A DNA stretch of 64,000 bases, from IMG/VR virus record IMGVR_UViG_3300028840_008185, positions 1 through 64,000 of that record; one strand, written 5' to 3'. Position 1 is the stretch's first letter; each line of letters starts with the position of its first letter. The position numbers were made by a program, and so were the translations under genes. The notes beneath the pieces were generated by a model that saw only the letters and a program-made list of their open reading frames with translations, had not been told where the DNA came from and ran no database searches. Shown here in pieces: positions 6,809 to 49,406 of the stretch.

Positions 6809-7391
6809 CTTCCTTCTCCTTTTCTAAATAAACTCGCAGGCTCTAAGTATTATGATTCCAAACATTCCAACAAGAACTAGCATCCAAATTGCAACAAAGG
6901 TCCAACCAATTGCCCTTGAAAAACGCGGAAACTTTTCATAGATGTGCTGGCAGCCGCGAATAATGCCAAACACAACAAGAGCGAGAGCTATTATAAAGCC
7001 CATCATCATTAGGAACTCTCTGGATTCTTCCGGACTAATCATTCTTCAGCCTTTCTAATACTCTATCAATGACCTTCTGTGCTCTTTTACTTGGCCTCTT
7101 TGTCAAGAAACCTCTTCTCCTGCCCTTGTCGTAAGGAACCGGAGTGGAAAACTGCACTGCGGTTAAGTCCACAACCTTGCCGTTATCTTCTATCCACCAG
7201 TGAGAAGCGCCCTCGTGCTTTAAATTGACCGCATATAATCCGGCGGCTTTGCCGCCTTTCAGGTGATAGTAAGCCTCGCTGGCCACATAACAATGACCTG
7301 CGAGAGGATGAGTTCCACGGAACTGCGGCTTCAGCAGATCTGGCGTTAGAGACTTTACGATAAGCTTCTTGATGTTCATATTTTCCTTTCG

Positions 7392-7471
7392 AGCCGGGTG
7401 GAGGAATCGAACCCCTTGCCTTTCGGCGGCGCCTTACAAGGGCGCTGTCAGCCCAGCCGACATCACCCGGC
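7392..7471 (-). tRNA. tRNA-Thr (TGT), atypical: 8/4 fold with variable-arm hairpin
   Basis: GCCGGGTG/CACCCGGC, GCGCC-CTTGTAA-GGCGC, V arm GCC-GAAA-GGC. Confidence 0.8.
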
Positions 7472-7478
7472 GGTGTTA

Positions 7479-7947
7479 TTGAGAAGATCGATAGGCGGGA
7501 TTCTGTCTAGGGCCATCATTCATCTAGGCCAGCCATTACTGACTAGCTCAAGCCCCCTACCCAATCCTTAATCTGCGAGCAACAGACGGATCTGTTTGGA
7601 GTTGCACCACCTAGAGATTGGCCGTTTCAACCAGACTTAACTGGCTCGTCTCTGTTCCTCTAATCCGGCCCTCACGGGCGATGGGCGTTGCCCACTAAGC
7701 TGCTCTGTGGTGTCCCGACCTTCCTCGTCAAGATTGCTCGTCTCCATAAATTAGTTTGCGTAGAATCTCATATGCCACCTTAGCACACTTTTCTTGGTAA
7801 AGTTCTTTTGCTTTGCAATAAACCTTACCCTCATTTTCAAAGGTTCCCAGAAGCCTATGAAGTTCAACATACGCCCTAATAAGCTCATCCTTCTCTTCGT
7901 AAGTCATGGAGACTCGCTTTCTTGCCGCGATGGCCTAATCTTCTCAA
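7479..7947 (-). ncRNA. rnpB: RNase P RNA, minimal bacterial type, with an ORF-containing P3 insertion
   Basis: CR-I GAGGAAGGTCGGGAC, CR-II ACAGAGA, CR-III TGAAAC, CR-IV AGATGAAT, CR-V ACAGAATCCCGCCTA; P1 TTGAGAAGAT/ATCTTCTCAA; P2 GGCCATC/GATGGCC. Confidence 0.93.
7728..7907 (-). CDS. 59-aa ORF nested in RNase P RNA helix P3 (MTYEEKDELIRAYVELHRLLGTFENEGKVYCKAKELYQEKCAKVAYEILRKLIYGDEQS)
   Basis: uninterrupted ATG..TGA frame filling the P3 insertion; composition like neighbouring phage ORFs; just under the ORF-track cutoff. Confidence 0.7.
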   Translation of the reverse strand: MTYEEKDELIRAYVELHRLLGTFENEGKVYCKAKELYQEKCAKVAYEILRKLIYGDEQS

Positions 7948-11987: not shown

Positions 11988-12075
11988 TGGCGGAGGGCAC
12001 TGGAATCGAACCAGATGCCTCTCGACACGCACTCGTTAGCAGCGAGGCTAGGGAACACATCCCTATTTACCCTCC
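11988..12075 (-). tRNA. tRNA-Ser (GCT), CCA encoded
   Basis: loop CTGCTAA; long V arm; ends GCCA. Confidence 0.88.
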
Positions 12076-14372: not shown

Positions 14373-14459
14373 CGGAGGCGGAGGGAGTCCAACCCCCACG
14401 AGTCATTATCTCCTAACAGTTTTCAAAACTGCGGCCACCGGCAATTGGCTTGCGCCTCC
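14373..14459 (-). tRNA. tRNA-Ser (TGA)
   Basis: CAGT-TTTGAAA-ACTG; long V arm. Confidence 0.85.
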
Positions 14460-26288: not shown

Positions 26289-27587
26289 TTACGATGCTTT
26301 CATGTTGTGTAGTGGCTTCAAAACATTCAATATTTCCGCCGTTTCTGATAAGTTGCTGATGATTTCGTCGCTGTCTTTGTATGCGCCTGGCGCCTCATCC
26401 AATGTGCTTTCACCTACGGAGGTGGAAAATATGCTACTCATCTCATCTTGAAAATCATCCAGCGACAACTTCTTCTTTGCTTGGCTTCTACTCATCTTAC
26501 GGCCTGCTCCATGTGGAGCCGAATAGTTCCAATCCTCATTTCCCTTGCCCACACAAAGCAAAGAGCCTTCTTTCATATTCAACGGAACAATAAACTCTTC
26601 ATCCTCGTGGGCACTAACAGCTCCCTTCCTTATTATCATGTCGTTAAAGTTAATATAGTTGTGTATAGTCTCTAATGTTTTAGACGCTTTCTTAATCCCA
26701 AGGGCTTTCATAACAGCATGGGCAATTGCTTTCCTATTGGCCGCAGCATATCCTTGAGCTAAAATCATACTAAACAAATATCCATACTTATCATCGCCCT
26801 CAAGCCATTCCAAGCCACTTGCTTTTATCTTAACATCAACGCCCAACCTTTCCTTGGCTTTCCTAATCTCTTTCTGCCATTCTTCATTAGGAAGACTTTG
26901 TTTGATGTTATTAATAGCTTCTTTTAAGTCTTCTGTCCTAAGCTTCTTTAATCTTTTCTCTGCTCTCTTTTGCCAGTAATTACATATCTTTAGTCCAAAG
27001 TTTCTTGACCCCGTATGAATAATGAAATAGCTAAGTCCAGATTTTGATTCACAAAACTCAATGAAGTGGTTGCCGCCGCCCAGGGTTCCTAGGCTGCGCT
27101 CTACATATCCTCTGTCGGCATTGACTTGCTTGCACACCTCGCCAAGAAATCTACTATCCATGGTTGGGACATCGCAATTAAACTTGGCCCCAACCTGTCG
27201 AGCCTTATGTCTTAGGTCTTCCCAGTCAATCCAATCGTCAGTTTTGTATTCTTTTGATTCATGTATATCGAAACCAAAAGGCACGGATTGTCTAACCTTG
27301 TGGTCAAGCAACTCGTGATCTATCTCATCAAAAGCATCACCGACTTCACACACAAGCATTCCACAACCAATATCTACGCCAACCACATTTGGAATTACTT
27401 TGTCTCCCAGAGGCATTGTGAAGCCAATAACAGAGCCCTTACCTGCATGAGTGTCTGGCATAATAGCTACTGGATTTGTGAACGCTGGATGGTTGATCAT
27501 GCGTGTGATTTGTGCTACGCATTGTTCTTCAGCGTTGTCTGTGAAAACCGTAGCATCACTATATTTGCCGTAAATTATGAAGCTCAT
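26289..27587 (-). CDS. rtcB: RtcB family RNA ligase
   Basis: MPDTH.G.G..IG, VGVDIGCG, GTLGGGNHFIE, HTGSR, HNY, RKGA, SAPHGAGR, DEAP.AYK. Confidence 0.96.
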   Translation of the reverse strand: MSFIIYGKYSDATVFTDNAEEQCVAQITRMINHPAFTNPVAIMPDTHAGKGSVIGFTMPLGDKVIPNVVGVDIGCGMLVCEVGDAFDEIDHELLDHKVRQSVPFGFDIHESKEYKTDDWIDWEDLRHKARQVGAKFNCDVPTMDSRFLGEVCKQVNADRGYVERSLGTLGGGNHFIEFCESKSGLSYFIIHTGSRNFGLKICNYWQKRAEKRLKKLRTEDLKEAINNIKQSLPNEEWQKEIRKAKERLGVDVKIKASGLEWLEGDDKYGYLFSMILAQGYAAANRKAIAHAVMKALGIKKASKTLETIHNYINFNDMIIRKGAVSAHEDEEFIVPLNMKEGSLLCVGKGNEDWNYSAPHGAGRKMSRSQAKKKLSLDDFQDEMSSIFSTSVGESTLDEAPGAYKDSDEIISNLSETAEILNVLKPLHNMKAS

Positions 27588-27606: not shown

Positions 27607-27679
27607 TACCCCCGGAGGGCAACGATCCCCCAACCTCCTGGTTAAAAGCCAGTTGCTCTGCCAATTGAGCTACGGAGGC
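27607..27679 (-). tRNA. tRNA-Lys (TTT) copy 1
   Basis: loop CTTTTAA; divergent T loop ATCGTTG. Confidence 0.85.
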
Positions 27680-27686
27680 AAGTAAG

Positions 27687-27761
27687 TGCCCCCGGTAGGA
27701 GTCGAACCCACAACTCACGGGGTAAAAGCCCGGTGTGATTAAACCATTTCACCACGGAGGC
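27687..27761 (-). tRNA. tRNA-Lys (TTT) copy 2
   Basis: CGGG-CTTTTAC-CCCG. Confidence 0.88.
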
Positions 27762-29086: not shown

Positions 29087-30817
29087 TTAATAGTTTTCCC
29101 TGATATATTCCAGGGTTGGAAGCACTCTCTCACCCTTTACTTCCTCAACACCCTCAAACATGAGAATCTGCTGGAAAATCTTCTCAGAGAATCCAGCTAC
29201 AACATTGGAACGAGGGTCGCCAGATGGCGCCTGCTGCGTTCCATAGCCCTTAAGGTCGAAGAAGTGAGCGTAGGCCTGAGGGTTGACCTCCCTGCGATAC
29301 TTCGCAAGGAATTCAGCGACACTTCTGTTTCCGCCCGTGTCGTAGCACTGCATATCGGACAGGACCACGATTCTGTCTACGTGGATCTTCTGTTCGAACA
29401 GGTGCTTGAAGACTTCATAGGCGTTTGTTGCCTGACCTCTATAGTTGGCCTTGTAGTTCGCAATCTCGTTCATGTTGGTCACAACCGAGTTGCGCTTGCT
29501 TAGAACTGGCCAAACAGCCTTGTTTCCAAAAGCGGTGACGTAAGATTCGTCAGAACGCTGATGGACCATGGCGGCAAGGATGTTTGCAGTATCCAGCAAC
29601 GTCACACAAGAGCCCTTGGACAATGGGTATTTCATGCTTCCAGAGTTGTCAGAAGCAATGCAAGTTATTCCCGAAAGCTCTGGGATGTTCTCTACCGAAT
29701 GATCAAGAGCAGTCTCAACCGCCTCAACAAGCAGCTGAACAGATCTCTGATCCCAGGAACTTCTGTTACGGTTGGAAGAAGCACTTCCATATCCGCGAAT
29801 CGAAGAGAACCAAGCATTACCAGGGTTCAGGGTTCTGTATAGAGCCATGAACCTAAATGGAAGCTGCTTAGACTTTCTAACAGCCTTAGCGTCTCCGATT
29901 CTCTCCGCAACCATCCTGATGACAGCCAGAGGCATGCCGGCTTCCAAGAAGTTGGCAACGTTACGAATCAGAGCCATATAAGGCATCAGTGGAACAACTG
30001 CTCCCCATACCTCTGGCTTGCTTCCAAACTGGGACACAAGAACTTCCCAAGTAACTGCGGCTTTCTTGGCCAAAGCTGGAATATCCTCAGTCCATAGATT
30101 ACGGGACGTAAGCTCCTTACGAGCCGCGATTACAGGAGTGGCCTTTGGGTTAAGAACCTCTCCAGTAAAGATATAATGGCGTAGCTCTGGAGACAGAGGG
30201 TACCCTTTTCTCCTCTCGCAGAAGCGTAGGAGATCCTTAAAGGATGGGTGTCCCTTTCTGTTATACTTCAAGATTTCATACTCGGACATCTTGGACATTC
30301 TATCAGCAACTCCCTTCTTCAAGGAAGCTGGGAACGCTTTCCAACCGAATAGGTGCTCATAAGCCGCGACAAGCTGAAGCACGTCATCTGCCCTTCTGGA
30401 GATACGAGGCACGTATCTACGGACGAATGGCTTGGTTCCAGCGGAATTTGCAGCCACGGCAAGCATAACCTGAGGCGTAGTTCTCATGTTCATCTCAACA
30501 CGAGCCCAATGCGCCAGAGCAAGCAGATCCTTTGGATTTGGTCCTCTGGCGATCTCTCTACACGCCTCGATAATCTTGACGGCTTGCTCGTCAAGATCCT
30601 CAACGTTATAGTCACCGTCCCTTAGTTTCTTTGGGTCAAGAGTATCTGGGTGATACTTTGGCTCCACGAACAGGGCGGATCCAATTGTAGCCAGCAAGTA
30701 TTCTGCTGGGCTCTCGAAATCAAACGCAAGTCCGCCTGGCCTGTTGGCCGTAGCAGCCTTGTGCTCCCTTAGTGCGTCTTCAAAAGTTCTCTTGTTCTTC
30801 ATTCCTAGCTTCGTCAT
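29087..30817 (-). CDS. rsr: Ro60/Rsr TROVE-domain RNA-binding protein with C-terminal vWA
   Basis: N..GG.AF, AR...NMRT, RADD, LKKG, TWE..S, MPYMALIRN, SKQLPFRF, vWA MIDAS DNSGSM, LSDMQ, GFSEKIF. Confidence 0.95.
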   Translation of the reverse strand: MTKLGMKNKRTFEDALREHKAATANRPGGLAFDFESPAEYLLATIGSALFVEPKYHPDTLDPKKLRDGDYNVEDLDEQAVKIIEACREIARGPNPKDLLALAHWARVEMNMRTTPQVMLAVAANSAGTKPFVRRYVPRISRRADDVLQLVAAYEHLFGWKAFPASLKKGVADRMSKMSEYEILKYNRKGHPSFKDLLRFCERRKGYPLSPELRHYIFTGEVLNPKATPVIAARKELTSRNLWTEDIPALAKKAAVTWEVLVSQFGSKPEVWGAVVPLMPYMALIRNVANFLEAGMPLAVIRMVAERIGDAKAVRKSKQLPFRFMALYRTLNPGNAWFSSIRGYGSASSNRNRSSWDQRSVQLLVEAVETALDHSVENIPELSGITCIASDNSGSMKYPLSKGSCVTLLDTANILAAMVHQRSDESYVTAFGNKAVWPVLSKRNSVVTNMNEIANYKANYRGQATNAYEVFKHLFEQKIHVDRIVVLSDMQCYDTGGNRSVAEFLAKYRREVNPQAYAHFFDLKGYGTQQAPSGDPRSNVVAGFSEKIFQQILMFEGVEEVKGERVLPTLEYIRENY

Positions 30818-30859: not shown

Positions 30860-31675
30860 TTATTTGCGGCTCTCGTATGACCGCTCTGCTAGTTCTGGCC
30901 CCCTCTTGTAAGTTTTGGGCTCCAGATCCTCAACAACTTCGTCATCACCGAAGTTGAAATCGTCATCTGTTAGTGTCGGCTTGGGCTTATTCATAGCCTT
31001 AAAAGCCTTTTCGTTTTGCTCGTCCAATATGTCAGCCATAGCATTTGCCTTGGCTCTCATAGTGTCTACAACCTCATAACGAACACCGGGCTCCTGAGCC
31101 ACCTTATATTCACCGGTATATTCAAGCAAATCCCTTAATTCTTTGACAGCCGCCTCATAATTCGCCTTTTTTGTATTCTCACGAAAAGCCACAACTGAAT
31201 TACCAGTCGGTATATGAAATACCTTAACGGCCTCACAGTTTCGCAAAACTTCCACTTTGAGGTCCACAGCTTTAATATCGTCCATTTTGAGTCCGCGTTC
31301 TTTTTTGGGCTTCTCATATACGGGCCTATTGTCCCATTTTGAATCGAGCACACCTTCTTCAACCATTTCTTCAAGATGAGCGGCTGCAAATATATTCCAA
31401 ATTGCTTGTGCTGCGTGATCTTCATCTTTCATCTTCAACTGGAACTGTAGTAAATGCCTTATAGCACTATCAATCGCGCGGCAGATGGGAAATCCCTTTT
31501 CCCAATTTCTATCTCCGTGTTTATCGCCGCCCCTTTGATATACTTTAGCCACTCTGAATAGTATGTTTGTCGGGATTAGGTCAAATCTCCCTTTGTCCGT
31601 TGTAGCACTTCTCTTAGCCCCATCCTCATATTCCATCATTTCACAATCATAATCGGTCGTATATTCTTTCGTCAT
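30860..31675 (-). CDS. dATP/dGTP diphosphohydrolase (DUF5664)-like domain fused to a GGQ-less RF-1-like segment
   Basis: KGRFDLIP, G..K.GDRNWEKG, SAIRHL, EDH.A; then DLKVEV...AVKVFHIPTG..V....T...N...A. Confidence 0.75.
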   Translation of the reverse strand: MTKEYTTDYDCEMMEYEDGAKRSATTDKGRFDLIPTNILFRVAKVYQRGGDKHGDRNWEKGFPICRAIDSAIRHLLQFQLKMKDEDHAAQAIWNIFAAAHLEEMVEEGVLDSKWDNRPVYEKPKKERGLKMDDIKAVDLKVEVLRNCEAVKVFHIPTGNSVVAFRENTKKANYEAAVKELRDLLEYTGEYKVAQEPGVRYEVVDTMRAKANAMADILDEQNEKAFKAMNKPKPTLTDDDFNFGDDEVVEDLEPKTYKRGPELAERSYESRK

Positions 31676-31902: not shown

Positions 31903-31919
31903 GTATAAAGGTAAAGTTT

Positions 31920-31993
31920 GGAACGCAGGAAAGAGTGTCGAGAGCTGGTCTCCTGTGCAAATGAAGTATCCCTCGGCTGGACCTTGCGGTTCC
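31920..31993 (-). ncRNA. Y-like RNA 1 (short, no tRNA cargo)
   Basis: GCAAGGTCCAG..GGATACTTC..TTTCCTGC scaffold with terminal stem; about 1.1 kb from rsr. Confidence 0.75.
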
Positions 31994-33611: not shown

Positions 33612-33685
33612 CGGAACCGACGAGAGTCGCACTCGCTTTCTCCGCCGTGACAGGGCGGTACCTCCACTACTTCGGCCTCGGCTCC
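33612..33685 (-). tRNA. tRNA-Asp (GTC) copy 1
   Basis: CCGCC-CTGTCAC-GGCGG; G73. Confidence 0.85.
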
Positions 33686-34169: not shown

Positions 34170-34611
34170 TCTTTCAACTCCCTCAAAGTGGCCTTGTTAA
34201 ACATTCTCTCTACCTTGGTTCTATCGCCGCGCACCCATATCTCATCGTCGCTCACGACCTCTGTGACCACGCCAGTCTTTCCGTTAATGGCCTCAAGGAG
34301 CTTCAAGACAGACGAGTGGTGCTTCTTCCTGCCCTTCTTCGTAAGCTCGCCTTTAAGATGGAGGACTACTTTATCGCCTTCTTTCATTTGCCTCTCTTTC
34401 TTTCCATTAGCTTCAGGTCGCCCTGACAGTAAGTTTCCACTTCCCCATTGTTCCATCTAACCTTGGGCATATCACCCCATATCATAGCGACTACTTCGCC
34501 TTCAATTTCATCGCCGGGAGTGTATTTTCCGGTCGGGACACGATTCGATCTGTGTATTACTACATCACCAATCTTGAAAAATATGTCTTGCATTTTTCTC
34601 CTTTCAAAAAT

Positions 34612-34724
34612 AAGCCAGGAATAAACGCGCTGGGGTTAACTACTGGAATTGAACCAGCTTAGTTTCGTTATCAGCGAAATGCATTACCATAATGCGAAGT
34701 ATCCCAATCGCTGGACCTTGGCTT
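34612..34724 (-). ncRNA. Y-like RNA 2 carrying an unpermuted tRNA-Ile(GAT)-like D/anticodon/T body
   Basis: scaffold + GCAT-TATGGTA-ATGC, TTTCG-CTGATAA-CGAAA, GCTGG-TTCAATT-CCAGT. Confidence 0.8.
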
Positions 34725-37175: not shown

Positions 37176-37905
37176 ATAATATTTCTTCATACTCAAAAGC
37201 CCATCTTAAAACATAAATACCGGCAGCAAACCAGCTTCCACTTATGCTCTTATTAAACTTATCTCTAAAGCCGGCATAATGCACAAAAGTATTGAAACTA
37301 ATTGTGAGCCCTGGACTACGAAGTTCTATCATAACTTAATCTCTACATAATTGGGGATTGGCCTTGACCACAAATAAAACAACAACTCACGCCAAAGGAT
37401 ACTATTAATGATGTGCCGAGATTCATTTGTGAGAGACTGTAAAATCTCGCTTACATTCCCTATGAAACATTCGCCCGGAAAAATGGCCGTTGGGTGTCTT
37501 AACTCTATCATCATATCTTATCGAGCAGATCTAATGTCTTTCTAATCGGCTCCCTTTTGTGTATGCCTTTGGAGTATGAGCATTCCAGTCTTTTCCAGAA
37601 TCTCTGAAGCTCTAGCTTGAGTTCCCAGGGCAGATGTATGTAGGCTCTGTCTATGAACAAGTTGCCACTACGCGATACGCCCACATCGATGTCGCCATCT
37701 TCAAAGTAGAAAGTGGACTCGTAATATCTACGCTTCCACTTATCAACGGGGATCCCCTGTATCCTGGCCACCAATCTTTCTGCTGAAGTATCGGGGCATT
37801 TTAACTCTTCTCGTTGGCTATGAGCGCAGCCAATCAAGAAGCTCATTAGCATGGCAAACACTAATAAAACTTTCATTCCTTACCTTCTCTTTCTCTCCAA
37901 AAATA

Positions 37906-38029
37906 AACCAGGAAAAGTGATAAGGGCAAAACCCTTCCCCCTTAATTTGGGGGAGCCAGGAGTCGAACCTGAGCTGACATGATCTGTTTTACGGACAGTA
38001 TGAAGTATCCCTATATCTGGACCTTGGTT
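37906..38029 (-). ncRNA. Y-like RNA 3 with permuted cargo (anticodon arm GTA, T arm, loop-closed acceptor)
   Basis: scaffold + CTGT-CCGTAAA-ACAG, CAGG-TTCGACT-CCTG, TCCCCC-AAATTAA-GGGGGA. Confidence 0.8.
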
Positions 38030-38031
38030 CG

Positions 38032-40068: not shown

Positions 40069-40073
40069 ATCGG

Positions 40074-40144
40074 TACTCCAGGGCAGACTCGAACTGCCAT
40101 TTTTCGGTTATCAGCCGAATGTATTACCGTTATACGACCGGAGT
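40074..40144 (-). tRNA. tRNA-Ile (GAT)
   Basis: TTCGG-CTGATAA-CCGAA. Confidence 0.9.
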
Positions 40145-40843
40145 CTGTTTATATCTTTCCCATATCTGCGTGTATAGTTTGCCAGCCTCTTGAGCGAACG
40201 AGTATGTTCGTTTGATATAAGAAATGCAGACGAACGCCAATAATGCCTATCACTTGCAGATCGGTTTTGGTATGGATTACATTTTTGCGCGTCAGCTGCG
40301 GCTTTCTATCTGTTATTTCCATTCATGACTCTCCACATCATGCGCAACTCTAGTTCTAATCCAATCGGCCATTACCCATCTATGACCGTTTATCCTTCGC
40401 ATTGCAGGCTGGATGGCCATAATTATTTCCCATGTTATTATCGTCGTGTTCTTACTCTTCCATATCAGCTCAATTTCCATAGGTCTTCCTTAAGTCTTAT
40501 TTTCCACGGACCAAAAAGAGGCCACATATTAACGTGGTGCATTTCTATTGTATTTATTCTACACATTACAGTCAGCACAGCCGAAAAAATAAAACCCAAA
40601 TCGGTTGGTTTTGGCCTTACTTCATCCTTTCTGCGATTTACAAGTTCCATGAATCTTCTCTGTCCGGATTGTGTTTGTAGTATGGAAAATATTCCCTGAG
40701 GGCACGCGGCATAGATCCACCAAAACCAATTTCTATAGTAGTCAGTAATCTCCAGTATCCATCTTTAACGGCATACCCATACATGGCATAATCAGCTTCA
40801 TCTTTGATTATGTTCTTAATTTCCATATCTTCCTCAAAAAACT

Positions 40844-41027
40844 GGCCAGGAAAAGGGCGCAAAGAGAAGCTGTCCCTCATTCGGGACGCACTCCCCAAAG
40901 GTGGGAACCAGACAACCAGGTGGGATGGGGTCATCTGGCCCCCAGCGAGCCACTGATGGGCTCGCAAGGTTTATCGTGGGGAACGCAGGAGTCAAACCTG
41001 AAGTATCTCTTTACTTGGACCTTGGCT
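40844..41027 (-). ncRNA. Y-like RNA 4 (T arm, acceptor stem with ~80-nt insert, D arm)
   Basis: scaffold + CAGG-TTTGACT-CCTG, CGTTCCCCA/TGGGGAGTG, GTCCC-GAATGA-GGGAC. Confidence 0.8.
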
Positions 41028-41213
41028 CAATTTTCTTAATTCTTTTACTTATTTGTCTTACAAAAACCATACACGAGAGTCTCTCATTAAGGGTATCCCA
41101 GACACTATCGAAAGCTTTAAAGTGGATAAAGTCGTCAACACCTCTATATGAGCGTATTACCTTGATACTCTTCATTATTATTCTTCCACCAAAAATATCG
41201 ACATTTGCGGGAC

Positions 41214-41581: not shown

Positions 41582-41601
41582 TTAATTCTCCTTTCTGGGT
41601 T

Positions 41602-41677
41602 GGATAAGCAGGGAAGATTGCAAGAAGAGTTTCCTGTTGGTTGGTAGAAGTATCTTCTTACTGGACCTTGCTTACCC
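41602..41677 (-). ncRNA. Y-like RNA 5 (short, no tRNA cargo)
   Basis: AGCAAGGTCCAG..AGATACTTC..TTCCCTGCT scaffold. Confidence 0.75.
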
Positions 41678-42100: not shown

Positions 42101-42184
42101 AACCCCCTGGAGGAATCGAACCTCTTCGCCTCCACCCAACGTGCAAGGCGCGGGTTTAGAAGACCCGTGTCGGGATCAGGGGGC
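42101..42184 (-). tRNA. D-armless 8/4 tRNA-like RNA, anticodon TCT (Arg)
   Basis: GCCCCCTG/CAGGGGGT, CGGGT-CTTCTAA-ACCCG, ~26-nt V region, GAGG-TTCGATT-CCTC. Confidence 0.75.
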
Positions 42185-42188
42185 TTAG

Positions 42189-47066: not shown

Positions 47067-47873
47067 TTATATCTCCAAGGTTCCTGAGTCCAAGGGCACG
47101 ATATTCCATTCCATCTCTTTATCGAAATCGGCCTTATAATATTTGCACTCACAACAATAAGCTCCATCCCAGGTTATATCACATCTGTCTTGCAGCGGAT
47201 TATCAAAACTGGGAATATGAGCGCTCTTCCTGTGCCCACATTTGGGACATTTCGTAGTATCACGCATCTCGTATTCTATCATTACGCCATCCCTGGTTTC
47301 CAGTTGGGTTCTCTGTTTTCCAGAAAAGCCTTCGCGTGCTCTTCGCTTATGAAATCCTTAATCTTACCGTCGGGCCAAGTGAGACGAGCCATATACAACC
47401 TGTAGATCTTCTCGTCTTTTACAATAAACCTAGATGTCTCTACTCTCTTCATTTCTGGCTTCATTGTTTTAATCCTTTATGATTACAATCGTTCGTTTGC
47501 CTTTTCTTGGCTTACCTTTGACCGGCTTGGCTCCTGTGGGATTGATGTAGTATCCACCTCGATTACCTTCATCTACCCACTCACCCTTATCGCAACCACA
47601 CACAAGAACAGGGCCATCTCCACAGCGCCCATCGTAATAGGCTGCTTCACCGCAAACGCTACAAACCCATTCAGACATCAGTTCTCTTCTCCTTCTTTGA
47701 AGACCTGTGCCTTCTCATCTATGGTCTTTCTCACCGCTTTCTTCATAGCCTCAAGAGCTTGCTCATAAGTCATACGGCCAGTCTTCATAGCTTCTCGTAG
47801 CTCTTTGGCCAACTCTCCAAGTTCGGGAGAGTAAACGAAAGTAACATCACTCATCTTACCTGCTTTCTAAAAA

Positions 47874-48028
47874 GGAACCGTATCGGGAATGTGCGCAAAG
47901 AGTCCTGTTGTGATTTTCACCACACGCCCGTAAGAGTGGGCGTGCCTGGATTCGAACCAGGAGTCTATTGAATTAGAGTCAATTGTGTTTTCCGAAGTAT
48001 CTCCCTACTATGACCTCGATCTGGTTCC
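47874..48028 (-). ncRNA. Y-like RNA 6 carrying a complete D-loop-permuted tRNA with CTA (amber) anticodon
   Basis: scaffold + GGAAAACAC-A-ATTGA-CTCTAAT-TCAAT-AGACT-CCTGG-TTCGAAT-CCAGG-CACGCCC-A, linker CTCTTAC, GGGCGTG-TG-GTGAAAATC. Confidence 0.85.
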
Positions 48029-48930
48029 AACTCTATGTTAAGCATTCACTTAAGGCTGCTAGTAAGACCAACAATACAACCAATCCTAAACCAGCCATTA
48101 CTGCATATTTAACAAAATTACGAAATGAAATACCACTTCCATATTCTAATTCTATGAACTTATCAGCCGCTTTCTCCATTTCGTCGGCTTCAAAAGTTTC
48201 TATGGGCATAGGACAAAGCTCAAATCTGGTTCCATCATTATACACATCTATCTGGTGGTTCTTACAAACAGACCAACTAGATGGCTCCTGATTCTTAAGT
48301 TCAAGTAAATCAGTTTCCTTGTCCCACAAGTAAGCACATTGAACTGTATATTTACTACCATAGACGATGTGTTTCTCTTTAAGTTGGGCTATAATCTTAT
48401 CTCTATCCATCAATTCCACCCAAACATTACTGTAGCTATTAGCAGATACATCAAATAACCAACAACAGCGCCGCCAAGTATGTACGGCGAAAGTTCAGCG
48501 AGTTTCTTAAGTCTGTCCATTATCTTCCTCGTATTTTGCCTTGAGTCGCTCAAGTTGGGCTCTTTCTCTTGCCTCTTGTTCCGCGAGTCTTTTCCGCTCT
48601 TTCTCTTCTTCTTTCTTTGCTGCGGCCTCGTTTCTTAGCCTTATGGCCTCTTCCTCTTTGACCACCCAATCATCGTCCCACAAATAAGAGAGCGGAAAAC
48701 TGACATGCTCGTAATCTGTATTACATCGAAAAGAAAAGTAAAAGGTGGCGTCTATTTGGTCATCTTCAATTTCAACTTCATCGGGATGCCACTCATCAGT
48801 AATAATACCACGAGCTATAGCTACCTCTGTAGCGATCCTTTCTGCTTCAACCATCACCTTCTTGTATTTAAGCACTGCTTCTACAACTGCTTCTCTATCC
48901 ATTTCTTCCATGTTCCCACCTTTCTGAAAA

Positions 48931-49063
48931 TTATCCAGGAATAAACGGCCAGGGAGAAAAATTCGCCCACCATAAAGCGGTGGGCCCTGGATTTGAACCA
49001 GGTCATTGAAGATTGGAAGTTTCAATTCATCCGAAGTATCCCTAATACCTTGACCTTGGATAA
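48931..49063 (-). ncRNA. Y-like RNA 7 carrying D-loop-permuted tRNA-like cargo (TCC-like loop)
   Basis: scaffold + bulged arm around CTTCCAA, CCTGG-TTCAAAT-CCAGG, GCCCACC-GCTTTAT-GGTGGGC. Confidence 0.8.
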
Positions 49064-49148: not shown

Positions 49149-49168
49149 ATATTAAGTTTTGATGAAAC

Positions 49169-49403
49169 AAGCCAGGAAAAATCGACAGAGTTTAATCATC
49201 CGTGTCCTACCACTGGACTACCGCTCGGTAATGGCGTCGGGGTTATGAACCCCTGAATACACCGTGCGTGGTAAGCCGTGTCATTACCCTTTGGACTCGC
49301 ACGGGATTCCCAGACATCTGGTTGCCTTGTCGAGCGGCCAGGAATCGAACCTGGGCTACGGGCTCCGCATGCCAGAAGTATCTCTCGTCTGTAACCGTGG
49401 CTT
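49169..49403 (-). ncRNA. Y-like RNA 8 (anticodon-loop-permuted tRNA, ~110-nt structured insert in the acceptor loop)
   Basis: scaffold + CCAGG-TTCGATT-CCTGG-CCGCTCG-A ... CGAGCGG-TA-GTCC-AGTGGTA-GGAC. Confidence 0.8.
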
Positions 49404-49406
49404 TCG

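What the first reader, a model, noticed from the sequence alone, without database searches (positions are those of the whole stretch)
34612..34724. Y-like RNA 2 appears to have captured a tRNA-Ile(GAU) body at a UC microhomology
Seen: the cargo (UC-GCAU-UAUGGUA-AUGC-A-UUUCG-CUGAUAA-CGAAA...) parallels the free tRNA-Ile(GAU) at 40074-40144 (UC-GUAU-AACGGUA-AUAC-A-UUCGG-CUGAUAA-CCGAA). The tRNA U8-C9 coincides with the end of GAUACUUC, and the acceptor stem is replaced by the scaffold, so this RNA cannot be charged. Copy 6 also joins at a UC shared with its tRNA. Inference: cargo is acquired repeatedly at one fixed scaffold site, giving an unchargeable RNA that displays an intact anticodon loop, as a decoy would.
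Basis: partly seen in the sequence, partly recalled or inferred. Interest (0 to 1): 0.65.

Follow-up and report, generated by a model that had tools for sequence, protein, structure and literature searches.

The report
Phage Y RNA carrying tRNA-shaped body
A giant marine phage encodes, beside its Ro60 and RtcB RNA-repair genes, eight Y RNA paralogues, and this one carries an almost complete but unchargeable tRNA body with an intact anticodon arm; that is a conserved new layout of the known tRNA-mimicking Y RNAs, not a recent capture of the phage's tRNA-Ile gene.

Summary
The sequence observation holds. Window 34612-34724 (- strand) is a 113-nt RNA in which two covarying stems (S1, S2) enclose a tRNA body in native order: 3 bp of acceptor stem, U8-C9, D arm, anticodon arm with loop CUGAUAA, and T arm. 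Rfam's tRNA model scores it 41.4 bits over positions 5-66.

It is one of eight scaffold copies upstream of, and on the same strand as, a Ro60 orthologue (29087-30817) and RtcB (26289-27587). Related members align end to end to Rfam YrlA. The RNA is therefore a Y RNA of the YrlA kind.

Capture from the resident tRNA-Ile(GAU) is not supported:
- The resemblance is 27/35, mostly the 7-nt loop. Without the loop, tRNA-Asp is about as close.
- The T arm is unrelated to tRNA-Ile.
- Three homologues in two other metagenome contigs share the architecture, with 16 of 33 pairs changed on both sides, and carry UAU or UAA.
- GAUACUUC is a conserved family motif, not a junction scar.
- The claim about copy 6 fails.

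Scaffold and body similarities are discordant between homologues (p about 4e-4 in opposite directions). That supports module exchange among paralogues.

A role as a Ro60-bound tRNA mimic, either a decoy for anticodon nucleases or a tether, is inferred and not shown. Verdict: new variant of a known kind.

The parts
34612..34724 (-). Whole Y RNA paralogue 'c2' (113 nt): S1, internal loop, S2, then tRNA-like body
   Evidence: Sequence. MFE fold gives S1/S2 plus three hairpins, -32.8 kcal/mol, z -2.5. Rfam tRNA 41.4 bits.
34716..34724 (-). S1 5' strand, AAGCC(A)AGG. It pairs with 34612-34619 (CCUGGCUU).
   Evidence: Helix 1 of A4 has 4 of 9 pairs changed on both sides.
34711..34717 (-). GGUCCAG, the presumed Ro60-contact motif (compare metazoan GGUCCGA). 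It faces the U-rich 3' loop GUUUAUU at 34620-34626.
   Evidence: Present in the scaffold copies. The resemblance to the motifs described in PMC4201824 is by sequence only.
34703..34711 (-). S2 5' strand, GCG(A)UUGGG. It pairs with 34627-34634.
   Evidence: Helix 2 of A4 is 100% paired, with 5 of 7 pairs changed on both sides.
34696..34703 (-). Conserved family motif GAUACUUC. Here ACU forms acceptor positions 5-7 and UC falls on U8-C9.
   Evidence: Alignments to tRNA models. The motif is present in the family members found in Ro60-encoding contigs and occurs as GUUACCUC in Bxz1.
34681..34695 (-). D arm, GCAU UAUGGUA AUGC (G18 G19 present; U at position 14)
   Evidence: Compensatory GUGU/ACAC in L175.
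34663..34679 (-). Anticodon arm, UUUCG CUGAUAA CGAAA. Anticodon GAU is at 34670-34672.
   Evidence: Stem pairs 52-62 and 53-61 of A4 are changed on both sides in homologues.
34642..34658 (-). T arm, GCUGG UUCAAUU CCAGU. It is followed by AGU (34639-34641), which pairs with ACU of the motif.
34605..34611 (-). U-run (AUUUUUG) after S1, then RBS and ATG of a 69-aa ORF (34384-34593)
   Evidence: The same arrangement follows most copies.
29087..30817 (-). Ro60 orthologue, 576 aa
   Evidence: Pfam TROVE 3.8e-34 and vWA_Ro60 8.5e-9. tblastn hits 'Ro-like RNA binding protein' of phages.
26289..27587 (-). RtcB RNA ligase, 432 aa
   Evidence: Pfam RtcB 3.3e-66.
31917..31993 (-). Copy c1, short-loop Y RNA
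37895..38031 (-). Copy c3: hairpin with loop CCGUAAA, T arm, closed 6-bp hairpin
40840..41030 (-). Copy c4: T arm directly after the motif, then a large inserted domain
41600..41675 (-). Copy c5, short-loop Y RNA directly after tRNA-Trp. It is the likely positional counterpart of c2-type L128b and L175.
47870..48029 (-). Copy c6: anticodon-like arm (CUCUAAU), T arm, closed 7-bp acceptor-like hairpin, mini D arm
48935..49062 (-). Copy c7: T arm, then closed 7-8-bp hairpin
49165..49405 (-). Copy c8, YrlA-type order: T arm, acceptor-like stem with large insert, UA, canonical D arm
40072..40144 (-). Genuine tRNA-Ile(GAU), the comparison partner

Best explanation
What it is: a non-coding Y RNA of the bacterial/phage YrlA kind, one of eight paralogues that this giant marine phage encodes inside its tRNA array next to its own Ro60 and RtcB genes.

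Structure: the two ends pair (S1), then comes an internal loop carrying GGUCCAG opposite a U-rich strand, then a second stem (S2). This is the presumed Ro60-binding module. The second module is a tRNA-shaped body in native order: D arm, anticodon arm with a 7-nt loop showing GAU, and T arm. Its acceptor stem is reduced to 3 bp and runs on into S2.

Consequence of that structure: as encoded, the RNA has no free CCA end and cannot be aminoacylated.

Origin: it belongs to a conserved subfamily found in related phages. It is not a recent copy of the resident tRNA-Ile gene. Bodies and scaffolds appear to have been exchanged among paralogues.

Inferred mechanism (not shown): phage Ro60 binds the scaffold, and the L-shaped body with its exposed anticodon loop engages a tRNA-recognising factor. 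The likeliest role is competition with tRNAs for a host anticodon nuclease. Alternatively it tethers Ro60, or a nuclease or ligase recruited by Ro60, to tRNA-handling machinery, as part of a phage tRNA damage-control locus.
For: Shown:
- tRNA-like body without a full acceptor stem: Rfam tRNA 41.4 bits over positions 5-66, own tRNA model 44.6 bits, no ARAGORN call.
- Eight scaffold copies and no more in the genome. All fold as S1, loop, S2, cargo.
- Ro60 orthologue 3.8 kb downstream on the same strand, and RtcB 1.5 kb beyond it. This mirrors the Salmonella rsr-yrlBA-rtcBA operon (PMC7790460).
- The same scaffold motif lies upstream of Ro60 genes in many of the 35 IMG/VR Ro60 loci.
- Rfam YrlA aligns end to end to one member, L090:9400-9539, at 39.5 bits.
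- Bxz1 YrlA carries GUUACCUC at the same place.
- Three homologues of the c2 type: L175:1143-1213 (52.8 bits), L128:5707-5777 (51.9) and L128:3690-3755 (21.8).
- On their alignment 93.8% of cells pair, 16 of 33 pairs are changed on both sides, 0 of 500 shuffles reach this, and slid controls reach at most 51.5%. Each of the four folds alone into the same shape.
- Discordant scaffold and body identity: L175-L128b 48/55 versus 34/60 (p 4e-4), and c2-L128a 26/56 versus 47/60 (p 5e-4).

From the literature:
- Y RNAs are two-module RNAs with a Ro60 site plus an effector site. YrlA mimics tRNA (PMC4201824; 10.1101/312249).
- A competitive-inhibitor role against an anticodon nuclease has been proposed for YrlA (PMC7790460).
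Against: - No expression or end-mapping data exist. The DNA is known only from sediment and seawater metagenomes, and no RNA runs hold it.
- Ro60 binding is inferred from position and motif only.
- The motif is GGUCCAG, not the YrlA GNCGAAN0-1G, and the Rfam YrlA model does not score c2 itself.
- The anticodon is not conserved among homologues (GAU, UAU, UAA, UAA). That weakens any model needing a specific anticodon.
- c2 has U instead of A at position 14, which would break the U8-A14 tertiary pair.
- Covariation rests on four sequences from three sources.
Confidence: 0.62

Rival explanations
1. One reading: a Y-like scaffold recently captured the body of the resident tRNA-Ile(GAU) gene by recombination at a UC microhomology.
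For: - Positions 8-43 match tRNA-Ile(GAU) at 27/35, above every tRNA-tRNA pair in the genome.
- U8-C9 occurs in only 3 of 40 tRNAs, tRNA-Ile(GAU) among them.
- tRNA-Ile(GAU) is also the top match for homologues L175 and L128a (0.74 each). An old tRNA-Ile-like donor for the whole subfamily therefore remains possible.
Against: - Without the 7-nt loop, Ile (0.71) is not separable from Asp (0.68).
- Two of the five anticodon-stem pairs differ on both sides.
- The T arm is unrelated to tRNA-Ile.
- c2 is closer to L128a (28/35) than to tRNA-Ile.
- The architecture is conserved in other phage contigs with other anticodons.
- The UC belongs to a motif conserved in members that have no tRNA body at all.
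Confidence: 0.1
2. It is a cis-acting processing or termination element, not a free RNP. In this reading a tRNA-like punctuation structure with a terminator-like stem and U-run separates upstream tRNAs from the downstream small ORF and guides RNase P, Z or E cleavage.
For: - Most copies sit between a tRNA and an RBS plus ATG.
- Most end in a U-run right after S1.
- The phage encodes its own RNase P RNA.
Against: - The scaffold motif is tied to Ro60 genes across dozens of unrelated contigs, always on the Ro60 strand.
- A family member aligns to YrlA.
- The conserved internal loop and G(A/U)UACUUC are not needed for a terminator.
- The two roles are not mutually exclusive.
Confidence: 0.12
3. 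It is a tRNA precursor. The leader and trailer pair, RNase P and a 3' nuclease release a tRNA-sized molecule, CCA is added, and the product decodes or is charged, as reported for cleavage and CCA addition of M. smegmatis YrlA.
For: - ARAGORN calls the homologues L175:1142-1213 tRNA-Ile(UAU) and L128:5707-5778 tRNA-Leu(UAA). They have 5 contiguous acceptor pairs.
- The genome encodes RNase P RNA and two CCA-adding-type nucleotidyltransferase domains.
- There is a precedent in PMC4201824.
Against: - In c2 only 3 acceptor pairs form, and positions 2-4 are mismatched.
- No CCA is encoded.
- The helix continues for 8 more pairs into S2.
- A 'Leu' anticodon sits on a class I body with a 4-nt variable loop in L128.
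- The anticodon drifts by point changes.
Confidence: 0.08
4. It is a decaying tRNA pseudogene that lies by chance inside an inverted repeat.
For: A14 is replaced by U, and the acceptor stem is lost.
Against: - Compensatory changes keep all helices in four homologues.
- The flanking stems belong to an eight-copy family with a conserved motif.
Confidence: 0.02

Closest known systems
YrlA Y RNAs (Rfam RF02553; Chen et al. 2014, PMC4201824; Wang et al. 2018, 10.1101/312249)
   Same: - Encoded close to a Ro60 orthologue on the same strand, and here also near RtcB.
- Two modules: a terminal stem with a Ro-type motif, and a tRNA-like module with canonical T and D arms.
- A conserved UA-containing motif follows the second stem.
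- Other members of the same family have the YrlA order (window c8, c6; L090, L097, L140, L113). L090 aligns end to end to the YrlA model.
   Different: - The tRNA-like module of c2 is in native order (D, anticodon arm, T) and joins the scaffold through the acceptor position.
- It keeps a 7-nt anticodon loop, which YrlA lacks, and it has no closed acceptor hairpin.
- The Rfam YrlA model does not score it.
- Its motif is GGUCCAG, not GNCGAAN0-1G.
Deinococcus radiodurans Yrn1 (as described in PMC4201824)
   Same: It has the same orientation. The Ro60 stem takes the place of the acceptor stem, and an 'anticodon arm' with a 5-bp stem lies before the T-like arm.
   Different: - Yrn1 has a 6-nt loop, no clear D arm and no V region.
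- c2 has a full D arm and a canonical 7-nt loop.
The phage's own tRNA-Ile(GAU), window 40072-40144
   Same: U8-C9, A26 and an identical loop CUGAUAA. Identity is 27/35 in positions 8-43.
   Different: - c2 has no 7-bp acceptor stem and no free 3' end.
- Two anticodon-stem pairs are changed on both sides.
- The T arm is unrelated.
- c2 has U14.
Thermus phage phiLo Ro60 with Yrl1/Yrl2 (PMC12135203)
   Same: A phage-encoded Ro60 with Y-like RNAs just upstream. A counter-defence role was suggested.
   Different: - The phiLo RNAs were picked by a CGAA motif, and no tRNA-like body is described for them.
- I found no clear G(A/U)UACUUC scaffold upstream of phiLo Ro60. There is a single TTACTTC with no obvious scaffold.

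Membership tests
YrlA-type bacterial/phage Y RNA | Encoded within about 4 kb of a Ro60 (TROVE) gene, on the same strand | tested here: met
   The 3' end of c2 at 34612 is 3.8 kb from the Ro60 start at 30817, on the same strand. c1 is 1.1 kb away.
YrlA-type bacterial/phage Y RNA | Score at or above the Rfam RF02553 gathering threshold (69 bits) | tested here: not met
   No YrlA hit on c2 even at E up to 10 on 156 nt. The only YrlA hit in the window is a tandem tRNA-Lys false positive at 33.2 bits. The relative L090:9400-9539 aligns over 1-114/114 but at only 39.5 bits.
YrlA-type bacterial/phage Y RNA | 5' motif GNCGAAN0-1G | tested here: not met
   c2 has AAGGUCCAG, closer to metazoan GGUCCGA. 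Some relatives have GGCGAAG (L073).
YrlA-type bacterial/phage Y RNA | Second module with tRNA-like T and D arms able to form the elbow | tested here: met
   T loop UUCAAUU and D loop with GG. Rfam tRNA 41.4 bits. Covariation in the D and T stems.
YrlA-type bacterial/phage Y RNA | Permuted order: T arm, closed acceptor-like hairpin, UA, D arm, with no anticodon loop | tested here: not met
   c2 has D, anticodon arm, T, and no hairpin after the T arm. The order is met by c8, c6, L090, L097 and L140.
YrlA-type bacterial/phage Y RNA | Bound by Ro60 | not testable with these tools
   Needs RIP or EMSA.
Functional tRNA | 7-bp acceptor stem with a free 3' end for CCA | tested here: not met
   Only positions 5-7/64-66 pair, and the strands continue into S2 and S1. 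There is no ARAGORN call.
Functional tRNA | D, anticodon and T arms with a 7-nt anticodon loop (U33, purine 37) | tested here: met
Copy of the resident tRNA-Ile(GAU) | Similarity to tRNA-Ile(GAU) over the whole body, clearly above other tRNAs | tested here: not met
   The excess is confined to the anticodon arm. Without the loop, Ile scores 0.71 and Asp 0.68. The T arm matches His and Val best.

The most novel reading that the evidence does not exclude
The arm just 5' of the T arm in this phage Y RNA family may be a true anticodon display. Loops are 7 nt and have a U33-like base in 12 of 13 examples and an A37-like base in 12 of 13, with a free-varying triplet: GAU, UAU, UAA, CUA, GUA, GAA, GCU, UGU. 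On this reading the eight paralogues form a panel of Ro60-bound, unchargeable tRNA look-alikes. Each would be tuned by point mutation and module swapping to a particular host anticodon nuclease, as a decoy, or to a particular broken tRNA, as a guide for Ro60/RtcB repair. The native-order c2 type and the circularly permuted L085 type would then also be living intermediates of the proposed origin of Y RNAs from tRNA transcripts.
Probability: 0.17. Interest if true: 0.85.

Novelty: new variant of a known kind. Interest (0 to 1): 0.62.

Why it matters
- Y RNAs that mimic tRNA are known, but their partners and purpose are not. The described YrlA type lacks an anticodon loop.
- A conserved subfamily presents a complete tRNA shape with a canonical anticodon loop. 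It sits in a phage locus with Ro60, RtcB, an RNase P RNA and 35 tRNAs in the window (40 in the genome). This gives a concrete, testable handle on the proposal that these RNAs compete with tRNAs for anticodon nucleases or steer Ro60 to tRNA-handling enzymes.
- The family shows three topologies of one set of parts: native order, YrlA order and open-acceptor permutation. It also shows signs of module exchange. Both bear on the proposed origin of Y RNAs from tRNA transcripts.
- Practical point: tRNA finders call some of these RNAs tRNAs, which inflates phage tRNA counts and codon-usage inferences.

Tried and rejected
- Megablast of 12 kb against GenBank phages gave no match.
- The viral contigs pattern scan gave 68 hits, of which only L004 was a real relative. 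The rest were coding-sequence chance hits.
- The genome contigs pattern scan gave 120 rows, all GC-rich chance matches with no real member.
- The genome search on the record behind L004 failed because the record is not held.
- The Rfam YrlA model did not hit c2 or two short L073 members.
- The sigma-70 promoter scan found no more sites than in shuffles (29 versus 30.1), so it was uninformative.
- Sequencing runs: only DNA metagenomes hold the stretch, so expression could not be tested. Laid contigs showed no variation inside c2. The roughly 90% relative in X4 stops at 34509.
- Cognate versus non-cognate stem energies across 47 candidate members favour cognate partners (S2 -9.9 versus -3.9 kcal/mol; S1 -12.7 versus -4.9). 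The 3' partners had been chosen by energy, so I do not count this as independent evidence.
- A pairing partner for GAUACU common to all copies was sought by eye and not found. It pairs with AGU(U/A)AAC only in the c2 type and with GUAUC in L004a.
- MAFFT alignment of short copies misplaced the 3' arm, so no family-wide covariance model of the scaffold was built.

Full report
**1. What is in the sequence**

On the - strand, 34724 to 34612 reads AAGCCAAGGUCCAGCGAUUGGGAUACUUC, then GCAU UAUGGUA AUGC, A, UUUCG CUGAUAA CGAAA, CUAA, GCUGG UUCAAUU CCAGU, AGUUAAC, and finally CCCAGCGC GUUUAUU CCUGGCUU.

- Rfam's tRNA model matches 34639-34700 at 41.4 bits (gathering 29; E 2.3e-5 for the 64-kb window), but only over model positions 5-66.
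- A model built from 28 of this phage's own tRNAs (A3, R1) gives 44.6 bits.
- In both alignments ACU of GAUACUUC pairs with AGU after the T arm, and the last two letters fall on U8 and C9.
- ARAGORN finds 35 tRNAs in the window, all on the - strand, but not this one.
- The MFE fold has a terminal stem S1 with a bulged A, an asymmetric internal loop (UCCA opposite GUUUAUU), a second stem S2, and a three-hairpin cloverleaf.

**2. The scaffold is a repeated family next to Ro60 and RtcB**

- The held genome is one 318,373-bp virus record, 45.8% GC and CheckV 79% complete. Stretches identical to it lie on a 452,599-bp metagenome contig.
- The DNA occurs in marine sediment and seawater metagenomes.
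- An HMM of the 5' arm finds exactly eight copies, all between 31.9 and 49.4 kb on the - strand.
- All eight fold as S1, loop, S2, cargo. Several begin a few bases after a genuine tRNA, and most end in a U-run followed by the RBS of a small ORF.
- Just downstream on the same strand lie a 576-aa Ro60 orthologue (TROVE 3.8e-34, Ro60 vWA 8.5e-9) and a 432-aa RtcB (3.3e-66).
- This is the gene set of the Salmonella rsr-yrlBA-rtcBA RNA-repair operon (PMC7790460).

The label 'Y-like RNA' is therefore well founded. Ro60 binding itself remains an inference.

**3. The family is a divergent branch of YrlA**

- Thirty-five IMG/VR loci encode relatives of this Ro60. Many carry one to five elements upstream of Ro60 on its strand with the same plan: S1, a short purine-rich loop ending in YAG, an 8-bp S2, G(A/U/C)UACUUC, a variable insert, the S2 partner, CGAYWAUU, and the S1 partner.
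- Long members have the published YrlA order of T arm, closed acceptor-like hairpin, UA, D arm (L090:9419, L097:9756; also L140, L113 and window c8).
- The Rfam YrlA model aligns to L090:9400-9539 over all 114 positions at 39.5 bits. That is below the threshold of 69. Its consensus 'CUA' falls on the UAC of the motif.
- Mycobacteriophage Bxz1, a phage in which YrlA was described, has GGUUACCUC at the same place upstream of its Ro gene.
- GAUACUUC is therefore a conserved core motif of the family. It probably contains the conserved UA reported in 10.1101/312249. It is not a scar of capture.
- Different members use the motif differently. It forms acceptor 5-7 plus U8-C9 in c2, part of the T stem in c4, part of a small stem in L087 and Bxz1, and loop in c1 and c5.

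**4. Is the body a captured tRNA-Ile(GAU)?**

- In positions 8-43 the body matches the resident tRNA-Ile(GAU) at 27/35. That is higher than any of the 780 tRNA-tRNA pairs in the genome (maximum 0.76, mean 0.527, sd 0.069). U8-C9 is shared by only 3 of 40 tRNAs.
- The seven loop bases supply much of this. Without them Ile scores 0.71 and Asp 0.68.
- Two of the five anticodon-stem pairs differ on both sides.
- The D arm is slightly closer to tRNA-Asp (15/18 against 14/18), and the T arm is closest to tRNA-His and tRNA-Val (15/17).
- A metagenome scan followed by the tRNA model found three more RNAs with the same architecture, each inside the same scaffold:
  - L175:1143-1213, 52.8 bits, loop CUUAUAA.
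  - L128:5707-5777, 51.9 bits, loop CUUAAAA.
  - L128:3690-3755, 21.8 bits, loop CUUAAAA.
- c2 is closer to L128a (28/35) than to tRNA-Ile.
- On the four-sequence alignment A4, 93.8% of cells form standard pairs and 16 of 33 pairs are changed on both sides. No shuffle out of 500 reaches this, and slid controls reach at most 51.5% paired and 3 pairs.
- Each of the four folds alone into the same shape.

c2 is therefore a member of an inherited, structurally constrained subfamily whose 'anticodon' drifts by point changes (GAU, UAU, UAA). tRNA-Ile(GAU) is also the best tRNA match of L175 and L128a (0.74 each). An old tRNA-Ile-like contribution to the D and anticodon half cannot be excluded. A recent capture from the resident gene is not supported.

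**5. Copy 6**

- The tRNA model aligns its anticodon-like arm (AUUGA CUCUAAU UCAAU), variable region, T arm and the 5' strand of the following hairpin. The 'D arm' columns do not pair, and the UC is not at positions 8-9.
- The genome has no tRNA(CUA), and no resident tRNA resembles the arm (13/19).
- After the T arm, copy 6 has a closed 7-bp hairpin and a mini D arm, which is the YrlA order.

**6. Module exchange**

- L175 and L128b both follow a tRNA-Trp and have very similar scaffolds (48/55), but their bodies are dissimilar (34/60).
- c2 and L128a have dissimilar scaffolds (26/56; 7/36 at the variable positions) but similar bodies (47/60).
- The two contrasts go in opposite directions, with Fisher p of 4e-4 and 5e-4. 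A single rate difference between scaffold and body cannot explain them.
- In the window, the element after tRNA-Trp is the short-loop c5. A homologue of the ORF downstream of c5 also lies about 0.9 kb downstream of L128b.

This speaks for exchange, loss or gain of bodies between paralogous scaffolds. The sample is small: four sequences with short arms.

**7. Mechanism**

Shown:
- An RNA gene family with conserved stems.
- A tRNA-shaped module that, as encoded, lacks a free acceptor end.
- Linkage to Ro60 and RtcB.

From established knowledge:
- Y RNAs bind Ro60 through the terminal stem and use the other module to bind an effector (PMC4201824).
- YrlA folds like tRNA (10.1101/312249).
- RtcB reseals RNAs ending in 2',3'-cyclic phosphate, such as tRNAs cut in the anticodon loop. 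The authors of PMC7790460 suggested that YrlA may act as a competitive inhibitor of the anticodon nuclease.
- A phage Ro60 with Y-like RNAs can recruit host PNPase (PMC12135203).

Inferred:
- c2 binds the phage Ro60 and presents a full L-shape with an exposed anticodon loop to a tRNA-recognising factor.
- I rate a decoy or competitor role as somewhat more likely than a pure tether role. Across the family the arm before the T arm keeps a 7-nt loop with a U33-like base in 12 of 13 examples and an A37-like base in 12 of 13, while the middle triplet varies.
- That pattern is what a displayed anticodon loop would keep. The drift of the triplet argues against one fixed target.

**8. Rivals**

- Recent capture from the resident tRNA-Ile gene (see section 4).
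- A cis-acting processing or terminator element. The U-run, RBS context and phage RNase P RNA favour it. The tie to Ro60 and the YrlA homology speak against it as the sole role.
- A pre-tRNA that is cut and CCA-tailed. ARAGORN calls two homologues tRNAs, and M. smegmatis YrlA is a precedent. Against it, c2 has only 3 acceptor pairs.
- A decaying pseudogene, which the covariation contradicts.

**9. Verdict**

The RNA is a Y RNA of the YrlA kind with a previously undescribed native-order tRNA module that retains the anticodon arm. D. radiodurans Yrn1 is the nearest precedent for this orientation. The specific capture story is not supported, module exchange is partly supported, and the decoy function is plausible but untested. 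It is a new variant of a known kind and of moderate to high interest for Y RNA and phage-defence biology.

Noticed in passing
window 7476-7745 (-): A bacterial class A RNase P RNA (145.8 bits, gathering 100) is encoded by this phage. It is only about 270 nt long and lies directly next to an 81-nt tRNA-Thr(UGU) at 7391-7471.
   Followed up: no
window 26289-27587 (-) and 29087-30817 (-): RtcB ligase and Ro60 lie 1.5 kb apart on one strand with three tRNA-Lys genes between them. This is a phage version of the bacterial rsr / Y RNA / rtcB repair locus. Two CCA-adding-type nucleotidyltransferase domains lie elsewhere in the genome (G000 105043-105405 and 203310-203741).
   Followed up: partly
L085:783-907 (+) (IMGVR_UViG_3300033149_007137): A circularly permuted relative. 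It has an open 7-bp acceptor stem, UA and a D arm. The Y scaffold then forms a closed hairpin where the anticodon arm should be, followed by GUUACUUC, a small arm with loop CUGAUAA, and a T arm. The tRNA model gives 48.6 bits; MFE is -51.3 kcal/mol, z -4.3. It looks like a tRNA with a Ro60-binding arm.
   Followed up: partly
L175:1142-1213 and L128:5707-5778: ARAGORN annotates these scaffold-embedded c2-type RNAs as tRNA-Ile(UAU) and tRNA-Leu(UAA). Phage tRNA counts may therefore include Y RNAs.
   Followed up: yes
window 27651-27719 (-): The only Rfam YrlA hit in the window (33.2 bits) spans the junction of two tandem tRNA-Lys genes: the T arm of one and the D arm of the next. This is the dimeric-tRNA false positive that the YrlA authors warned about, and it illustrates their dimeric-tRNA origin model.
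   Followed up: partly
window 33612-33685 (-): A tRNA-like sequence scored by Rfam (44 bits) and by the phage tRNA model (42 bits) that ARAGORN does not call. Its anticodon and status were not examined.
   Followed up: no
window 14374-14459, 11992-12075, 42101-42185 (-): Weak, sub-threshold matches to the tRNA-Sec model (33-36 bits against 47), about 85 nt each. They may be long-arm tRNA-like RNAs or further odd tRNA relatives.
   Followed up: no
window 30860-31675 (-): The 271-aa ORF between Ro60 and copy c1 has a dATP/dGTP diphosphohydrolase N-terminal domain (2.1e-16) and a weak, sub-threshold RF-1/peptidyl-tRNA-hydrolase-like match (0.0042).
   Followed up: no
L131, L139, L178 (Ga0180437_10000007, 452,599 bp): Stretches identical to the window's genome lie on a 452.6-kb metagenome contig. 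The 318-kb record is probably an incomplete piece of a much larger phage genome.
   Followed up: partly
family-wide: window c2, c3, c6; L175, L128, L176:9414, L183:1195, L113:1684, L087:9778, L071:9519, L198 (Bxz1): The hairpin just 5' of the T arm nearly always has a 7-nt loop of the form C/A-U-N-N-N-A-A, like an anticodon loop. The triplets seen are GAU (four times), UAA, UAU, CUA, GUA, GAA, GCU, UGU and UGC.
   Followed up: partly
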